Below are positions 3,022-61,239 of a stretch of 64,000 nt of DNA, one piece after another (within the stretch, counting starts at the first letter, position 1; every line of letters begins with the position of its first letter). The position numbers and the translations under genes were made by a program. A model generated the notes under the pieces. The model made no database searches, had not been told where the DNA came from, and saw nothing but the letters and a program-made list of their open reading frames with translations. Source of the DNA: Trichosphaerium sp. ATCC 40318 (taxonomy: Eukaryota; Protista; Tubulinea); assembly GCA_038496445.1 (NCBI GenBank), contig JALMLS010000635.1:58755-122754 (forward strand). Reading direction: 5' to 3'.

Positions 3022-6000
3022 TCATTTACCACCAACATTAATAGTATTGATAGCTGGATACACATACCTTCAAAAAAACCAATTAACCACTAAATTGTGA
3101 CAAAAAAAGAAGCAACAAAAAAAAACACGTGGTACGGCTTACCTGACTCTATTTTATAAGTCATATGTGATGCGCTGAGAGTAGAACTATCGAAATTGCC
3201 CTTAGCATTGCATTGGAACATTGTTGTATTTGGTGGACGCCATGCAATCTGAAAGCGAAAAAAATAAGAAAACTATTCGAAAAAAAAAAAAGTCATGATG
3301 TTATTGATTGGCGTACTCTACTTATTCCACCTCCTTTACCAGGTGGAAAATAATTAACAGAACTGTGATTAAAAGTTAGTTTACAAATATAACAGCCACC
3401 ACATGAAACAGTATAGTTCAATTGTTGTCCAAGCCTCTGTTTTTTAGCTGAAAAAGGTCCAATTTTCATGATACGTGAACCTAGAGATAAACAACTATTT
3501 GAGTATTTAATTCATCTATACAAGTATATTGTACCGTGCATATCATTAATAGAAGGCCTTAATGAAGGAGTATGGTGCTATATAAAGTTAGATTGAACAC
3601 AAGTAAAAAGAATGCAGTTTGTTCATTAAACATGTAAACAATTTTAAATAATGTATGTACAGTAATGTGGTCCATCCTTGAGATTGATATGTTGACATAT
3701 CCATGGTTAAAAGATGGATTGAATGATCCTTTTATTTGTTCTGATCCAGCAAAGTGTATCTTCCCTGATGTATGTTTTGCTAGGTAAAAGAAATAAGCCG
3801 GCTTGTATGTACGTTTATAAAAATAAAAAATACTCCAAAGGATAAGGATGAAACATACGCTTATGAGCAGTAATACACTCCAACTTAGGATGCCTGTTTA
3901 CATAGAGATGTATTACAAGCGCTCCAACATTAATACCACAATCAATAATATTCAGAGAAAGTAGTTCAGGAGATAATGTTAGAATCTCTGCAACAAGTTC
4001 GTCTGATATTACAGTGGCACGTAAATCAAGTGTAGTTATTGAATCGAGTATAGGCGAAATCAATGGAGGCTTGATGGCTAGTGATGAGCTAACAATACCA
4101 AAAAAATCCCGCTTGGTTTCTAATAATCACGTGATTAGCAACCAATTCAAAGTGCGAAAAAAAAGAAGTAATTGATTACTTCTTAATACTTACTTGTAGC
4201 TGCAGCAGCTTCGAGGACTTCATCGTTTAGAGATTCAAACCCACCAAATGAAAGTGATGTTATGTTTTCTATTCAAAAAATTAATGAGTAAGAAGCTTAT
4301 GGTATTAGTTTGTTCAAAGCGGAGATTTGATTTGGGTTTTTTTTTTACCTTTTGACGCCAAGGACTTTAGGTGACTGGCATCAATATCACCGCAATCGCT
4401 TAAAATTATACTTGTTAAACCTTCATGCGCACATAGCACCTGTAAAGTGTATTAGTAATGATCTAAAACAAAAAGTACACGTGCATCTACTACTGTATCA
4501 CTTAGTTCAATACCAGTGCACTTGAACGACTTCACTTGAGGATTTCCTGGTATATATTTCTCTATTGACTTTGATGTGACGTTCTCACCTTCAAATTCCA
4601 CCTATATAAGATCAACACGTGCGGTTATTACAACAACAACTTACAGCTTTGAAAATATTACCAAAATCGATGGCGTTCAAGATAGTCTCATCTTTGACAT
4701 ATGTTTTATCGATAACGAGGGTACTGTATTGGTTTTCTGTTAGTTTAGTACTTATTGCTTCCAACAGAGGTTTCTTAAATCCAGGATGTAGAGAACAAAC
4801 AACAAGAAGAATTTGCCAAGTTCTGCTACATGCTGCTACGTCATACGCATTTCTATGACTAAGACATTACTGTTAATACAATATCTCTTGTATGATTATC
4901 GTACTCTTCACGTTTACTAAAAGGCTTGAATAGCAGTTTCCAGTCAAATCTATTCAGAGCATCAATGTCCAACTCAGTAGCGATCTGTGGAGGAAGAAAA
5001 ATTGTTAGTTTTACGTTTGTTCTGAATTCTTGCTTCTGTCTGTTCGTTCACACGTACCTTAAGTTCTTCTGCGGCCTTTTCTGCGAGTGGAGGTACTAAT
5101 GCTTCGGTATATAATGATACAGCAGCACAAATCAATGCTGTTGCATAACTCACGTGTACTAAAGATTAAAACAAAATTAACACGTGTGGTATTTACTACA
5201 AGTGTCATCACACCTTTAGGATCTTTTGGTTCAATTTCAATGGCACGTTTAAAGTGACCATGTATAACATCAACCTACATAAATATTACAAAAAGTTCAT
5301 GCATTGAAAACAAAAATTTTACAGAACAAAAAAAAAACAAAACTTACATCTTCTTGTTTACTGCTTGAAGACAAATCTAGAGAAAGCATAACACCAAGGT
5401 TAATCAAAACTTCAACATGGTTTGGATTGATCTCATAAGCCTATCATGATGTTATTGATCAAAACAAAATACAAACACAAAAAACCCAATCCACGTGTCA
5501 ACAAAAAAAAAAACATACAATTTTAATCTTTTCTAGAGCTTGTCTCAAAGTCATACCCGTGAGACACAGTCGAGCCCTTTAATAAAGTATTAGGCAAAGA
5601 AAGAGTATGAATTACACTTACCATGCAACGTAAGCAGGACAGTATTGTGGCTTAACAGTAACTGCAAGCTCAAATAACTTTTCTGCAGTATCCAATGCAT
5701 CAGATGAATTTGATGCACGGTCAGCTACTACTTTACCGAAATTAAAGAAAAGCTCGGGTTGTAGAAGCTACGAGGTAGTGAGTACATCACACGTAAAGGA
5801 GTCATCTGAGACACTCGTACAAATACATGCGGTGCAGCTTTAAGTTTGCTCAAAGCTCTCTGAAAAAGTTTGTCAGATTTTTTTCCTTTTGTTTCCAATC
5901 CAAGGTAAAGAAGTTCTTGAACTTCGGAGCTATCTAATTAAACAGTTATGATTATCATACGATGTAATCAAGAAACGAAAGTTAGACAGTACCTATTATG

Positions 6001-54154: not shown

Positions 54155-57100
54155 ATGGAGGTTGATCAGGCGTTAAAGGATATTTTTCTAGTATCTCTTG
54201 ACGCAAGTACAACAGGAAAATACACGTATTATGCCGAGTTGGCAACATCTATTGCCTTGAGCGATTCATTAGATGTTATGGATACTACAGATACAAGTGA
54301 CCAGCCCAGCTTTTTTTTAGAGCAAGGTATTTGTTTTAACGCGTTTTTGAAACGAAAAAAAACTAAATCAGTTAAAGTGCCCCAAACGGTACTCCAAAGA
54401 CACCCACAAGCTACTGGTTGGTCTTCAACAGCGCCCATTGTTAATTTTGACGCTATTCTATCGTCTGTGTCTGAAAAGTGCGTAAACAAATTATTTGTTA
54501 ATACTGACAGCTTTGACATAGTAACACGAGGCCGTTGATACTCAATACAAGCCATACACCTGCTATATTGCGTTGTTGTGCGAACTATCCACAAGGAGGT
54601 TTCTCTTGGTGTGTAGGCGCGTATAACCGTGCCAAGCAATACCAAAAGGTGAAATTAGAGCTTCAGAAAAAAACTTTTTAGCTGAAAACCGTCTTTTTTG
54701 TTAGAAATGGCCTAAAGTCGTTGATGAAGTACTCCCTCATATTATGAATCATATAAAGCAATTATTAATATTTGAACAACACTCACAAATGGATAACACT
54801 GTACGCTTTTTTTTTTTATTTTGTGCAAAGCGAGAATTTACTTTGTTGGTATTGTATGTCGTCTAATTCTTCCCAAGAATGATCCCGTTGGTAACTCACA
54901 ACTTCTTAATCATTTTGCGAATGTACCTGATGCACTAGTCGCTGAGCTAGCGCAAGTCTGTGCGCGTGAAGAGGCTGTAGTTGGTAGGATTTTTTTTGCC
55001 TTTTTAGTTGTACCGTTATCACCTCTTACCAATTTCTGTAGTTTTCTCTCCACTTGTTTCACAAGTCGTCGTTGCAATGAAACATGTTGTAAAACAAGGT
55101 GATGTATTCTCAAGTGCGTACCAATTGACTGTTATCTATAACTTGCTAATTTTGGTTTTGTTTTTTTTAGCGGATATTTTCGAGCTTTTCAAGAAACTTA
55201 AAGCGCTTATGAACTATCCACCGTTACTGGAGCTATTTGCATGCATGCTAGGGTGAGTAAGAGCGCTACATTCATCTTCAAAAAAAAAAAGACAAAAACT
55301 CATGTAGCACGTGTATTTACACGTGTTTTTATGTTTTGTTTTTTTTTCGAGCGTATAAAATGCTAATAAGAGTATTCAGTTTGGAGCTTGAGAAATCACA
55401 ACAAGCTACTGCACGTTCAATGGAAAATGATTCAATAATTGGACCTTTCTTGCAACTGTCTTCAATGAATAGCCCTACCAATCACTTTAATAGTGATCAA
55501 ATCAGGAATTACCCTAGGTGCGGTACTGCTGCTCTTCATCAACATCAAGATAAATACAGAAAAGTATTTACAGGCATGCAGGTATAATGACACAAAAGCT
55601 TTAAGATTTATTTTTTATGTTCTTATTTTTTTTTTTCATAGCGAGAGATGCACTTTATTTTAAAGAAGCTATGTGTATTTAAGTCTCCTAATGTACAAGC
55701 AAGAAAAATATTACTCATGTGGTTCGCTAAAACAGCACAACTTAATGAAATGCGCACTACATTAGCAGCAAATGATCCATTATACTACGAGGTATGTTTA
55801 TTATTTTTTCGAGAAAAACAAACTTGTTGCATGTGTTGTCTTCTTAAAAAAACCTGTAGTTGTCTCTCATGGCGTCATCAGATGCATTTTCAGTAAATCT
55901 TACTGCTATCATGCTTCTATTTTGCAAGCCCTTTCTGTACCCATCAACTGACAAGATCCGATTAATCAATCCACATTACGCCAGAGTGAGCAAACAAAAT
56001 CGTTATTTTGTTGTATGTGTTGAGCTCTCTAACAATTTCTTCTCCTTTAGTATAATCAATTGATAGATTACACTAAACAAACAACATTACTTACATCAAC
56101 ATACCCCGATGTTGCTGTGGATACAAAGATAAAAATGGGAACATTCAACTTTATTACAGATATTTTCTTTACAACGTTTCACATGATATTCGTTGGGTAC
56201 CTTCTAGTTCTTTATTTTCTTTTTACGGCTTATAGTTTGTAATAATATTATCGTAGAATAATGCCTATTGTTGAGCGTCATTCTAAGCATCTAACAGCTT
56301 TATTGAATACGAAACAAAAAGCTGCAAATCTTCAAAAACTTTATGGTTAGTAACTTTTTTTTTCGTTCCGATTGCTTAATCTTACACTACATTAAAGGAG
56401 CTGACTGGCATCAAACAAAAGATGGAAAGGCTCTTGATAAAGCATTAACTAAGCTATTTGCTTTAGTAGATGCATGGGATACTCACGCACTTGCACCCGA
56501 GTTGGTGAACAGTTGCTTGAAGTACCTTCATTTTTTATACTATGCCTAACTAATTTACATTTTAGCTTCTGCTATACTGCTATGCATTTCTTAGTAAAAA
56601 CCTACGAGGAATACCAACCTAAGGGACAAGCTGAAGCAGTATTTTCTGCATTCCCAGAGTACTTTATTCGTGTACCACTTGTACGTGTTTACAAAATCCG
56701 ATCGAAGCAAGTTTACGCTAAATTATTCCTAGCAATATGTTGCGTTTGTAGCACGTCAAAAACCGGCTATACTGAATACTCTAAGACTTGGACTTGTTAT
56801 TGATTTTATTGTTATATTTATGAATGCAACACATATTGTAAAGAGCCCTATCGTTAGGTATGTTCAAGAACAAACTGGAAAGAAAAAAATACACTTTTTT
56901 GGTTCTTTTTTTTTTATGTTTATGACTACTCTTAGGGCTAAATTTGCTACCTTACTTGCTGAGTTACAATACCAAAGTAAGAGAAAGACACCAGGCCCAA
57001 AGTACCAACAAAATTCTTTTTCATTCAACTCCACACAACGTAAGATTAGAACGATTATAAAAATGATATTTATATATTTAACTTTTTTTTTTTCCAAAAC

Positions 57101-59921
57101 AGCATCTTTGGGTCCTACGTCTGCTTTCCAGTCTCTGTACAAAAATTTCTTCATAAGCAACAAAAGATGTCAAAAAGATCTTGTGCCTGGACTTATGAAT
57201 ACATTCATCAACCTAGATGTAGTAGAGGTATAATTTGAAAAAAAAAGCACATACAACTTAACAGTATAAGAATTGACTTAACTAAAAAACAGGGCCTGGA
57301 CGTTGATAAAGAAAAGTATGATAAATACGCTGTTAGAAGGAACATAGCAATGCTCATTACTGATCTATGGGGCGTACCAATGTATAAAAAGATTATAACT
57401 CAGGTATGCACGAGTAGTTGGAACAAAGTCCGCCATTAATGTTTGTTTTAACAACTAGTTACTGTTAAATGACAAGTCAGAAGAAGCTCAACAGTTCCTT
57501 TCTACAATATTGAACGATGCTATCATGCTACTCAATGATGCGTTGGGACGATTAGTAGATATTAAACAGCTTCAAATGGCTATGAAAGACGTTGCTACGT
57601 GGAATGCTCAACCTGCCGAAACGTACAGCGTTCTTTGCTTGAACTGGAAACTCATATTTTTATAGTAAAAAGCGCCGTGAGGGATACTTTGGCGTACAAG
57701 AAAGGACTGTCAAGGTATTCTTTTTTTTCGCGTAGATAGCAACAGCTTACTTGGTTTCTTAATTTTTCTGCTAGGGATTCATGTCACTTGCAATTGCTAT
57801 TTTAGAGTTACTACAGCATTTATCGAGCACAAGGACTCTAGCATCAAAGTTTATGTCAAACAAACTTACTGCGTTCAAAACAGTATCTATGCTCACCCGC
57901 TTCTATGAGCAGATAGTAGGGCCTAAATTCAACGATCTTAATGTTGATAACCCTCAAAAATATAACTTTAAGCCACAGGTACGTACCGTAATATCTTAAG
58001 TCACTTTTACTAAACTATGACTTCTTTATAGGATCTTTTGAAGCGCATCATAGCGATTACAATGGGTTTTGCTCATGAGAAAATATTTGTTCATATGTTT
58101 GCAGAAGATATGGATTACGCTCATGAGTACATGAACAAAGGTAGGCGCATTATTGTTGATTATGATCTAAATCTGACTTAACCAAGTTATTGTTTAAGTT
58201 ACTTGTTTGTTTTAAGACTGACTTTGATCTTTTAGCATTATATGTTGTAAACAAACACTCCCTGCTAACGAAAGAAGCCATTGGAAACTTTAGAAAATTT
58301 GTTTTTGATGTATTAGCTGTCTTTGAAGCAGAACAAGCCAAACGTACTCAAATTTATTTTGCTTTTGATGATTGTTCCTAATTATCGCCTTAGTACCTCA
58401 AATTGATGAAATTGAGGACCCTATGCTTGTAGAATTAAGTCCTGAGGTCCAGGCAGAAAAAGATCGCGGTACGCTTCTCACAGAGGGCAAACAATTGGTG
58501 TTTTTTTTTTTGCTTACTAATGAAGAGTTCCACATGTTTTCTTTTTCTGTTATTCTTTGTGCTAATTTTTATTGTTTTGTAGAGGTTGATGAAGCTTATG
58601 TGGAGACCTTGCAAGATCTTGTATTCGATTCTGTTGAGATGTTTGATGATAATGGAGAATACAGGCATAGATTTGCTAAAAATATTAAAGCATCAGAAAA
58701 TTCATTCAATAAACAAAAAATAGAACGTTTAACAAAGGTACCACTTAAAATATGTTCACAAAATTAGCAACTTGAAATCCATAATATTATTTTTTCAGCA
58801 CGACACGTGCAAGTCTTCAACGTTGGTTTTCAAAAAAGAATTCCTTGTTTCTTCTTTTTTTCTATTTTTTTTTTTCTGGTTGTTGTGTACTCACTATCAT
58901 CTTTTAGGAATGTAAGATGCTTTCTGGTAGTTTACCTATAAACAGAGGTTCTTCTGTATTCGTAAGAACGGACGACGAGAGAATTGATGTTATGAAGGTA
59001 TGCCAACTTTCTTGTAAAACAATTCTGATTTTTTTCTTACTTTTTTTTTTTTCAAACAGGCGATCATCACAGGACCAAAAGGGACACCTTATGGATGCGG
59101 ATGTTTTCTATTCGATATATTCTTTCCACCAACATATCCTAACGACCCACCCCTTGTAAATATAACTGTACGTCCTTCCTTGTTGTCAAACTTTTTTTTT
59201 GTTTTGTCCAAAAAGAGCTACAAACTAACTAAACTTAGACCACTGGTAATGGGACAGTTCGTTATAATCCAAATCTATATAGTGACGGTAAAGTATGCTT
59301 GTCATTATTGGGTACATGGCATGGTGACAAATCATCCAAATGGAACTCTGTATCATCAACACTATACCAAGTACGATCCCTTTTAAAATATTTTTTTATC
59401 TCGAAATACTTCCCTCTTATTTTTGTCTCTTTCTTTGTAATACGCGCCTGTAATCAACTTCTTTTATTATATTCTTAGTGATACTTGTCTTAACGATTTT
59501 TTTACAGGTGCTTGTGAGTATCCAAGGGCTTATACTAATTGAAGAGCCTTACTTTAATGAACCTTCATATGAAGCACAGAGAAACACAAAAGAAGGTTCT
59601 TTACGTTCAAAGGAGTATAACGAACAACTCCAATATGATACAATACGATGGGCAATGGTAGATAGTATTAAAAACCCTCCAGAAGGTACGAAACAAAAGA
59701 AGAGAAACGTCACATTCAATGGCGTTCTTTAACATTTTTTTTTTTTGTTAGGATTCGAGGAAGTCATACAAAATCATTTCCTCATTGATGGTGATGATAT
59801 TCTTCGTCAATGCGAACGTTGGATTTCAGAAGCATCTGATACTATGAAACCGAAGCTAAAGCGTGTTGTTGGAGAATTTAAGAGAGCATTAGCACAATTA
59901 AAAGCGAAAAGTAACCAGTAA
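54155..59921 (+). CDS. Chimeric ubiquitination enzyme: Ufd2/UBE4 core fused to a BIRC6-like UBC (E2) domain, lacking a U-box
   Basis: Ufd2 core motifs [83 protein letters not shown] motifs [72 protein letters not shown]. Junction introns are phase-consistent. Confidence 0.88.
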
Positions 59922-60474: not shown

Positions 60475-61239
60475 TTACATCATAGTGCAACGTCTCTTTC
60501 GTTTAAAAGGTTTTGGTAAACCTGAATCTCGGTCCTTCCTTATCTCTCGTACAAGTTGATAAAAAGCTTCTTCAACATTTTCACGTGTTTTAGCTGATGT
60601 CTCAAAAAAAGGAATGCTGTAATGCTTTCCAAGCTCTTCTCCTTCTTCTTTAGTAACTACTCTTTGTTCTTCTAAATCGACTTTATTCCCAACTATTACT
60701 GAAGGGACATAATCTAGATCCTTCATCCTAAAATGAATCAACAAACCTTTTTTGATAAAATAATGCGAAAATTGGATTGTCAACTTGCCAAGTGTTCTGT
60801 ACCTTCTAATTTGGTCATAGAAAGCTGGTAGTTCCTCAAAAGATGTGCGGCTTGTAATAGCGTAAACAAGTAAATATCCTTGCCCTGTTCTCATGTACTG
60901 TACGTTAACAAATAAGTTAGTTACACATGGTAGCTGGCAAAGTGCTTACTTGATCACGCATTACATTGTACTCTTCTCTGCCTGCTGTATCAAGAATATC
61001 CAAGAGAAGCGTCTCATCATCTACAATACATCGTTTGCGATACCTACATAAGGTTATAAGGCGTTTGAACAAAGAGTAAAGTAAAATGCGTAAAAGTGTT
61101 TTTAATTGATTAAAAACGCTTACGAATCTTCTATGGTAGGGTCGTATTCATCAACAAAGTGGTTTTGAACAAGTTGTATTGTAAGTGCTGATTTACCGAC
61201 ACCACCATCGCCAATAACAACTATTTTATATTCAGTCAT
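60475..61239 (-). CDS. ras: Ras GTPase paralog 5 (DTAGREEY; CaaX CTMM)
   Basis: [53 protein letters not shown]; three introns. Confidence 0.93.

What the first reader, a model, noticed from the sequence alone, without database searches (positions are those of the whole stretch)
54155..59921. E4-E2 chimera: Ufd2/UBE4 scaffold whose U-box is replaced by a BIRC6-like ubiquitin-conjugating domain
Seen: an ordered series of Ufd2 core motifs runs into a complete UBC domain with catalytic Cys (codon 59296-59298, [18 protein letters not shown]). The junction introns 58344-58393 and 58469-58582 and the next intron keep frame, with no intervening stop. Where the U-box should start there is only DEIEDPML, which resembles the U-box opening DEFLDPLM. 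Established: Ufd2/UBE4 proteins end in a U-box that recruits a separate E2, while BIRC6 and UBE2O are E2/E3 hybrids that need no RING or U-box. Inference: this is a self-contained chain-elongating enzyme with a hard-wired E2, an architecture I do not recognise from characterised proteins.
Basis: partly seen in the sequence, partly recalled or inferred. Interest (0 to 1): 0.9.

Follow-up and report, generated by a model that had tools for sequence, protein, structure and literature searches.

The report
Ufd2 scaffold fused to BIRC6-type E2
An amoeba gene encodes one protein in which the body of the ubiquitin-chain-extending factor Ufd2 (E4) carries a complete, active-looking BIRC6-type ubiquitin-conjugating enzyme where the U-box should be. 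The same design is an old, widespread and apparently unstudied eukaryotic family, not a one-off.

Summary
A 29-exon GT-AG model (54155-59921, +) gives one open frame of 1246 aa. Its exons hit Pfam Ufd2P_core in order, then UQ_con. The UBC is closest to BIRC6, and the catalytic Cys is at 59296-59298 as stated. No U-box was found in any frame around the junction.

The architecture is not unique. 95 of the 120 best database clusters carry Ufd2P_core plus UQ_con. They come from Amoebozoa, cnidarians, molluscs, Lingula, amphioxus, a sponge, green algae (Chlamydomonas Cre12.g510300), a haptophyte and a chytrid. One relative encodes it as a single intronless ORF.

The window protein aligns end to end with these (about 37% identity, up to 756 bits) and keeps all 25 invariant family residues. 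The organism is Trichosphaerium: a transcript peptide matches exons 18-22 at 100%.

"DEIEDPML" lies in a variable linker and is not a U-box relic. The motif after it belongs to the BIRC6-type UBC module.

I found no paper that describes the family, and its function is inferred. The scan made the same reading on another piece of this genome (s1-411278).

The parts
54155..59921 (+). Whole gene: 29 exons, 1246 aa. Exons: 54155-54477, 54531-54648, 54705-54800, 54878-54983, 55042-55098, 55171-55252, 55380-55581, 55642-55791, 55860-55985, 56051-56196, 56257-56345, 56398-56521, 56566-56680, 56733-56857, 56936-57039, 57103-57227, 57293-57403, 57459-57622, 57666-57714, 57775-57978, 58032-58140, 58236-58343, 58394-58468, 58583-58737, 58908-58997, 59060-59167, 59239-59370, 59508-59685, 59752-59921.
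   Evidence: All 28 introns are GT-AG, with a median of 62.5 nt, and the frame is open throughout. The model aligns end to end with relatives.
54155..58343 (+). Ufd2-like N-terminal region plus helical core (exons 1-22, residues 1-~945). The Pfam Ufd2P_core part starts at about exon 8 (55642).
   Evidence: Pfam hits per exon are colinear. The family profile matches yeast Ufd2 residues 24-894 at E 2e-83. Foldseek aligns a relative's model to 2qiz over 938 columns, TM 0.68.
57582..58279 (+). Stretch backed by a transcript-derived peptide (P0001, MMETSP0405, Trichosphaerium). It confirms removal of introns 57623-57665, 57715-57774, 57979-58031 and 58141-58235.
   Evidence: 100% identity over 149 aa without gaps to model residues 775-923.
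58344..58393 (+). Junction intron 1 (50 nt, GT-AG). If unspliced, the frame stops after 12 codons, at 58379-58381.
58394..58593 (+). Variable acidic linker. It consists of exon 23 (58394-58468, containing DEIEDPML at 58405-58428), intron 58469-58582 (114 nt, in frame and free of stops) and the first codons of exon 24.
   Evidence: The linker is not conserved among relatives. It is disordered in the AF2 model of a relative, residues 899-913. No U-box hit in any frame.
58594..58997 (+). N-terminal extension of the BIRC6-type UBC module ([12 protein letters not shown]...YRHRF...). Intron 58738-58907 (170 nt) lies within it.
   Evidence: The same Y..L..L.FD...HHY motif precedes the UBC in RWD-UBC, SPRY-UBC and BIRC6-like proteins. 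The family profile matches BIRC6 residues 4490-4803 at E 1e-130.
59060..59685 (+). UBC core (exons 26-28). The NPN motif is at 59266-59274.
   Evidence: Pfam UQ_con. BIRC6 is the best PDB match. All 25 invariant family residues are kept.
59296..59298 (+). Catalytic cysteine codon (Cys1107).
   Evidence: This column is invariant in 72 family members.
59752..59921 (+). C-terminal helical extension of the UBC module and the stop codon (59919-59921).

Best explanation
Shown: this is one gene of the amoeba Trichosphaerium. It encodes a 1246-aa protein made of a Ufd2/UBE4-type N-terminal region and helical core, a short disordered acidic linker, and a complete BIRC6-type extended UBC module. That module has an N-extension, a core with catalytic Cys1107 and the NPN motif, and a C-terminal helical extension. 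There is no U-box. The protein belongs to a conserved eukaryotic family with this same architecture. Inferred: E1 charges Cys1107 directly with ubiquitin, so the E2~Ub that Ufd2 normally recruits through its U-box is permanently tethered to the scaffold. The Ufd2-like scaffold selects the acceptor. By analogy with Ufd2 this is most likely a protein that already carries ubiquitin, and the enzyme adds further ubiquitin without a separate E2 or E3, as an E2/E4 hybrid. My odds: architecture and family membership 0.93; catalytically active E2 0.85; E3-independent transfer directed by its own scaffold 0.6; acceptor is ubiquitin on a pre-modified substrate (chain extension or branching) 0.35-0.4.
For: The gene model has 28 GT-AG introns and one open frame. 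Pfam Ufd2P_core then UQ_con hit the exons in order. The UBC is nearest to BIRC6. Identity to full-length relatives is 36-38% over ~1150 aa. All 25 of 25 invariant and 63 of 66 near-invariant family residues are kept, including the catalytic Cys. 95 of the 120 best clusters carry PF10408 plus PF00179. These include complete Trinity ORFs from the amoebozoans Cavostelium and Pyxidicula and an intronless 1082-aa ORF on a 41.6-kb genomic contig (L001:3001-6249). The family profile matches yeast Ufd2 24-894 (E 2e-83) and BIRC6 4490-4803 (E 1e-130), with the two matches abutting. The AF2 model of relative P0010 has pLDDT 88 and pTM 0.86, and only the linker is disordered. Foldseek matches Ufd2p at TM 0.68 and the BIRC6 UBC at TM 0.87. 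A transcript peptide confirms the splicing of exons 18-22. The same UBC module sits behind other scaffolds such as RWD, SPRY and BIR, which fits a self-sufficient E2 aimed by whatever scaffold precedes it. Some members carry an N-terminal UBA-like domain (PF14555, E 1e-10), which fits ubiquitin as a ligand.
Against: No read or peptide spans the core-UBC junction in this genome. No member of the family has been assayed. The yeast Ufd2 loops that bind K29-linked chains (51-55 and 105-110, PMC5303827) fall in a region where the family profile shows no significant alignment; it aligns only from Ufd2 residue 208. BIRC6 and UBE2O, the nearest E2 relatives, are described as acting on unmodified substrates, so chain extension is not implied by the UBC type. 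The window protein itself has no recognisable ubiquitin-binding domain. The structural model is of a 37%-identical relative, not of this protein.
Confidence: 0.6

Rival explanations
1. It is an E2/E3 hybrid, but not an E4. The Ufd2-like scaffold binds unmodified client proteins or a partner such as Cdc48/p97. The tethered UBC then mono- or multi-mono-ubiquitylates them, as UBE2O and BIRC6 do.
For: The UBC is BIRC6-type. The yeast Ufd2 Ub-chain-binding loops are not detectably conserved. The window protein has no ubiquitin-binding domain.
Against: The whole Ufd2 body, not just a fragment, is retained and structurally similar (938 columns to 2qiz). Some members add UBA-like domains.
Confidence: 0.25
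2. The UBC works as an ordinary E2 that still needs an external RING or U-box E3. The Ufd2-like part only localises or regulates it.
For: Nothing here tests E3 independence. Most E2s need an E3.
Against: The closest relatives of this UBC module are the two E2s reported to act without an E3 (abstract of PMC12818219). The module is always found behind large scaffolds.
Confidence: 0.12
3. These are two adjacent genes (a U-box-less Ufd2 and a separate E2) that my splicing model and the first reader's wrongly joined.
For: No RNA crosses the junction in this genome. The junction introns (114 and 170 nt) are longer than the median of 62.5 nt. Leaving intron 58344-58393 unspliced gives a stop after 12 codons.
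Against: The linker and the UBC N-extension are in frame through GT-AG introns, and the UBC part has no start codon of its own. The model is colinear across the junction with more than 70 relatives. These include complete transcript ORFs and an intronless single ORF in genomic DNA.
Confidence: 0.03

Closest known systems
Ufd2 / UBE4A / UBE4B (E4 U-box ligases; yeast Ufd2p structures 2qiz, 3m62, 9khs)
   Same: The N-terminal region and the complete helical core are shared: Pfam Ufd2P_core 1-628 in relatives, profile match to yeast Ufd2 24-894, and fold match TM 0.68 over 938 columns.
   Different: There is no U-box; a covalently attached E2 takes its place. The K29-chain-binding loops of yeast Ufd2 are not detectably conserved.
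BIRC6 / BRUCE (giant E2/E3 hybrid; UBC structures 3ceg, 9qgw)
   Same: The extended UBC module is shared: N-extension motif, NPN plus catalytic Cys, and C-terminal helices. A relative is 50% identical with TM 0.87, and the profile E-value is 1e-130.
   Different: There is no BIR domain and no giant scaffold. The ~945 residues in front are Ufd2-like.
UBE2O (E2/E3 hybrid)
   Same: A large E2 with its own substrate-binding scaffold, and a related UBC clade (E 6e-9 on one exon; profile E 1e-62).
   Different: It is a more distant UBC than BIRC6. Its N-terminal domains are different and nothing in it is Ufd2-like.
Uncharacterised Ufd2P_core+UQ_con proteins (for example Nematostella LOC5513359, Lingula LOC106153808, Branchiostoma LOC109473492, Chlamydomonas CHLRE_12g510300v5 = Cre12.g510300 'UBC21', Volvox VOLCADRAFT_116740, Cavostelium EP01114_P010870)
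   Same: Same architecture from end to end, the same invariant residues and the same fusion point. The window gene is the Trichosphaerium member.
   Different: Only 28-38% identical. It lacks the long N-terminal extension of the animal members, and the UBZ-like finger and UBA-like domains that some members have.

Membership tests
Ufd2/UBE4 E4 ligases | Ufd2P_core helical domain | tested here: met
   Seven exons hit PF10408 colinearly. The family profile matches yeast Ufd2 at E 2e-83. Foldseek TM 0.68 to 2qiz (on relative P0010).
Ufd2/UBE4 E4 ligases | C-terminal U-box that recruits a separate E2 | tested here: not met
   No PF04564 in any frame of 58166-58938 at E<=10. None in 6 full-length relatives at E<=0.01 or in the precomputed domains of 95 clusters. 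hhalign of the junction profile against a canonical C-terminus aligns only the last core helix.
Ufd2/UBE4 E4 ligases | N-terminal ubiquitin-chain / UBL binding region (yeast loops 51-55 and 105-110, PMC5303827) | tested here: inconclusive
   The N-terminal family profile aligns with yeast Ufd2 only from residue 208. The structural alignment does cover the N-terminal region.
Ufd2/UBE4 E4 ligases | Chain-elongating (E4) activity and Cdc48 binding | not testable with these tools
   Needs biochemistry.
BIRC6-type E2/E3 hybrids | UBC fold with catalytic Cys and NPN motif | tested here: met
   Cys1107 at 59296-59298 and NPN at 59266-59274. PF00179 hits. The columns are invariant in 72 members.
BIRC6-type E2/E3 hybrids | Extended UBC module (N-extension Y..L..L.FD...HHY and C-terminal helices) | tested here: met
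   Profile positions 939-1244 match BIRC6 4490-4803. The motif is shared with RWD-, SPRY- and BIRC6-like proteins. TM 0.87 to 3ceg.
BIRC6-type E2/E3 hybrids | BIR domain and giant BIRC6 scaffold | tested here: not met
   The ~945 residues upstream are Ufd2-like. No BIR hit on the exons scanned.
BIRC6-type E2/E3 hybrids | E3-independent substrate ubiquitylation | not testable with these tools
   Needs an E1-only assay.
Ufd2P_core+UQ_con family (uncharacterised) | End-to-end colinear alignment with both domains in one polypeptide | tested here: met
   Model residues ~100-1240 align with P0009, P0025, P0021, P0024 and P0010 at 36-38% identity and 720-756 bits. A relative has a single intronless ORF. 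In this genome the junction rests on the splice model; RNA covers only exons 18-22.
Ufd2P_core+UQ_con family (uncharacterised) | Family-invariant residues | tested here: met
   25 of 25 invariant and 63 of 66 near-invariant residues are kept; the three changes are conservative.

The most novel reading that the evidence does not exclude
The Ufd2-core/UBC family is a third, ancient class of self-sufficient E2/E3 enzyme, beside BIRC6 and UBE2O. It would be an 'E2/E4' that extends or branches ubiquitin chains on already-modified proteins with E1 as its only helper. It would have been present early in eukaryote evolution. No vertebrate, arthropod, nematode, ascomycete, basidiomycete or land-plant member appears among the 120 best hits, which would explain why it was never studied.
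Probability: 0.35. Interest if true: 0.75.

Novelty: new variant of a known kind. Interest (0 to 1): 0.58.

Why it matters
A recent paper states that UBE2O and BIRC6 are the only two E2s that ubiquitylate substrates without an E3 (abstract of PMC12818219). This family puts the BIRC6-type catalytic module on an E4 scaffold and keeps its catalytic residues invariant from amoebae to amphioxus and green algae. If it is active on its own, it is a third hybrid class. It would also be a natural experiment on what a U-box does, because evolution has swapped E2 recruitment for a covalent tether at the same position. It can be tested directly in tractable organisms such as Chlamydomonas (Cre12.g510300, seen in plus-gamete cilia, PMC9561859) and Nematostella. 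The caveat is that the architecture is already visible in public automatic annotation. What is new is recognising and interpreting it, not its existence.

Tried and rejected
2. A search for peptide fragments spanning the junction, using the ORF 58372-58764 as query, found nothing.
3. The look-up of encoding contigs for P0001 found no record.
4. DEIEDPML as a U-box relic was rejected.
5. The similarity of '[11 protein letters not shown]' to the U-box opening of a canonical E4 was also rejected as a relic. That motif is the start of the BIRC6-type UBC N-extension and occurs in proteins with no Ufd2 part.
6. An alternative U-box exon in the junction introns was not found.
7. A single-sequence search of a relative's N-terminal 420 aa against the PDB found nothing. 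The profile version aligned only from Ufd2 residue 208.
8. In the tree, the single canonical UBE4B-like sequence fell on a long branch inside the family. I do not trust its placement and draw no conclusion about the origin of the family.
9. Ten literature searches found no description of the architecture. Burroughs et al. 2008 was not held under the ids I tried. Michelle et al. 2009 did not appear in the searches and I did not try to fetch it. Neither could be checked.
10. Rfam found nothing in the window.
Full report
**Observation**

The region 54155-59921 (+) reads as an intron-rich eukaryotic gene. I built a model of 29 exons in which all 28 introns are GT-AG, with a median length of 62.5 nt. 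The frame is open from the ATG at 54155 to the stop at 59919-59921 and gives 1246 aa.

- Introns 58344-58393 and 58469-58582, and the next intron 58738-58907, keep the frame.
- The cysteine codon is 59296-59298.
- DEIEDPML is at 58405-58428.

Scanned one exon at a time, seven exons hit Pfam Ufd2P_core at increasing profile positions, from 50-89 up to 501-564 of 628, with best E-value 1e-9. Two later exons hit UQ_con (E 2e-8 and 2e-4). One 59-aa UBC exon finds the BIRC6 UBC at E 2e-15, UBE2O at 6e-9 and UBE2Z at 8e-6. "BIRC6-like" is therefore correct.

**No U-box**

All open frames across 58166-58938, including the three junction introns, gave no U-box hit even at E<=10.

**Relatives**

A search with exon 20 returned two useful proteins:
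- A 149-aa peptide that is 100% identical (P0001).
- A 941-aa protein that has both domains (P0005).

Two further searches showed that the combination is common. Of the 120 best clusters, 95 carry PF10408 plus PF00179 and none of those carries a U-box. Named members come from these groups:
- Molluscs: Haliotis, Patella, Littorina, Liolophura and others.
- Other animals: Lingula, Owenia, three Branchiostoma, and the sponge Dysidea.
- Cnidarians: Nematostella, Actinia, Porites, Oculina.
- Green algae: Chlamydomonas CHLRE_12g510300v5, Volvox, Trebouxia, Ulva and others.
- Others: the haptophyte Chrysochromulina and the chytrid Gaertneriomyces.

Their names are "uncharacterized protein", "UBC core domain-containing protein" or misleading "E4 B-like" labels. 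The ESM Atlas holds a cluster that was automatically named for both domains.

The closest relatives are amoebozoan transcripts, Cavostelium apophysatum and Pyxidicula operculata, plus unnamed protist contigs. One of these, P0022, is a single intronless ORF of 1082 aa on a 41.6-kb genomic contig (L001:3001-6249). There the fusion does not depend on any splice prediction.

**The window protein is a member of this family**

My model aligns over residues ~100-1240 with P0009, P0025, P0021, P0024 and P0010 at 36-38% identity and 720-756 bits. It aligns at 28-31% with the animal members.

Taken separately, the scaffold half is 31-35% identical to the nearest members and 24% to a canonical UBE4B-like protein. 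The UBC half is 53-65% identical to the nearest members and about 50% to BIRC6-like proteins.

It keeps all 25 invariant columns of a 72-member alignment, including the catalytic Cys and the NPN asparagine. It also keeps 63 of 66 near-invariant columns.

In a quick tree it falls in a well-supported clade with the amoebozoan sequences. The larger groups follow taxonomy, with animals, green algae and haptophyte-like sequences each together, which suggests vertical descent. The tree is FastTree only, and the root and the place of the one canonical E4 are unreliable.

**Organism and RNA support**

P0001 is a peptide of MMETSP0405, taxid 498012, Trichosphaerium sp. ATCC 40318 (Amoebozoa, Discosea). 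It matches model residues 775-923 (57582-58279) without a gap. This confirms four of my splice joins, for exons 18 to 22, but it stops about 65 nt short of the junction intron.

A search for junction-spanning peptide fragments found none. I took no contig to be human.

**Anatomy of the fusion point**

A profile of the 72 members matches yeast Ufd2 residues 24-894 with profile positions 72-946 (E 2e-83). It matches BIRC6 residues 4490-4803 with positions 939-1244 (E 1e-130). The two matches abut, so nothing else lies between them.

In the alignment the scaffold is colinear with a canonical E4 up to its last helix. A linker follows that differs in length and sequence in every lineage. Then comes a conserved Y..L..L.FD...HHY motif. 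That motif also precedes the UBC in RWD-UBC, SPRY-UBC and BIRC6-like proteins that have no Ufd2 part. It therefore belongs to the E2 module.

DEIEDPML lies in the variable linker and is not conserved even in Cavostelium or Pyxidicula. hhalign of the junction profile against a canonical C-terminus aligned only the last core helix. I therefore reject the U-box-relic reading.

**Structure**

AlphaFold2 on relative P0010 with the family alignment gave mean pLDDT 88 and pTM 0.86. Only the N-terminal ~80 residues and the linker (899-913) were of low confidence. Foldseek matched Ufd2p (2qiz) over 938 columns (TM 0.68 by target) and the BIRC6 UBC (3ceg) at TM 0.87 with 50% identity.

The high pTM suggests that the UBC docks on the scaffold in a defined way. 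I could not inspect the coordinates, so this stays a suggestion.

**Mechanism**

Shown: an intact E2 active centre is permanently attached where Ufd2 carries its E2-recruiting U-box.

Inferred: E1 charges Cys1107, and the scaffold presents the acceptor. Two things favour ubiquitin as the acceptor. The whole Ufd2 body is retained, and some members add ubiquitin-binding-type modules. P0089 has an N-terminal UBA-like domain (PF14555, E 1e-10). P0008, P0011 and P0016 have a C-x2-C-x11-H-x3-C finger that I recognise, from memory only, as Rad18-type UBZ.

Three things count against it:
- The loops by which yeast Ufd2 binds K29-linked chains (51-55 and 105-110, PMC5303827) lie in a region where the family profile shows no significant alignment.
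- The window protein has no such added module.
- BIRC6 and UBE2O act on unmodified substrates.

I therefore hold the E4-like reading at about 0.35-0.4 and the plain E2/E3-hybrid reading at about 0.25.

**Literature**

Ten full-text searches found no paper describing a Ufd2-core/UBC protein.

Chlamydomonas Cre12.g510300 appears only in a list of E2s (PMC7522501) and as "UBC21", present in plus-gamete cilia (PMC9561859). A 2025 paper calls UBE2O and BIRC6 the only two E3-independent E2s (abstract of PMC12818219).

Two comparative papers that might mention the architecture (Burroughs et al. 2008; Michelle et al. 2009) could not be checked. The first was not held under the ids I tried, and the second did not appear in my searches.

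**Verdict**

The gene is real, it is correctly described, and it is not an artefact. It is one member of a large, old, automatically annotated family that is apparently unstudied. It is a new variant of the E2/E3-hybrid idea, not something unique to this genome.

The scan made the same reading on another piece of this genome (s1-411278). I did not examine that copy, so a second copy or allele probably exists.

Noticed in passing
window 58469-58582: This junction intron is 114 nt, a multiple of three, and has no in-frame stop. Retaining it would add 38 residues to the disordered linker without breaking the protein.
   Followed up: no
window 58344-58381; protein P0014: Leaving intron 58344-58393 unspliced ends the frame after 12 codons and would give a Ufd2 body without the E2. 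A Trinity isoform of a relative (P0014, 1037 aa, marked complete) likewise stops just before the UBC core. UBC-less isoforms may exist.
   Followed up: partly
proteins P0008, P0011, P0016 (N-terminal region); P0089, P0111: Some family members carry a C-x2-C-x11-H-x3-C finger that looks like a Rad18-type UBZ. Others carry an N-terminal UBA-like domain: PF14555 at E 1e-10 in P0089, and in the precomputed domains of P0111. The window protein has neither.
   Followed up: partly
proteins P0109, P0108, P0096, P0118, P0124, P0128; Atlas cluster: The same extended BIRC6-type UBC module occurs behind RWD, SPRY and other scaffolds. It also occurs in a cluster that is 78% giant viruses (Nucleocytoviricota). 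It behaves as a mobile catalytic cassette.
   Followed up: partly
window 56936-57039: Exon 15 has two possible donors in the same phase, at 56976 and 57039. They differ by 21 residues in a poorly conserved loop, and homology does not decide between them.
   Followed up: partly
window 60475-61072 (-): A Ras-like small GTPase gene converges on the 3' end of this gene, about 550 nt away. The scan's note s1-409570 covers this Ras family.
   Followed up: no
L001:3001-6249: In an unnamed relative (Logan run SRR10663366) the whole 1082-aa protein is one intronless ORF, while the Trichosphaerium gene has 28 introns. Two ORFs 0.8-2.7 kb downstream carry CLU and eIF3_p135 domains and may be parts of one gene.
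   Followed up: partly
The tool itself says the filter also trips by chance. I saw nothing human-like in the gene.
   Followed up: no
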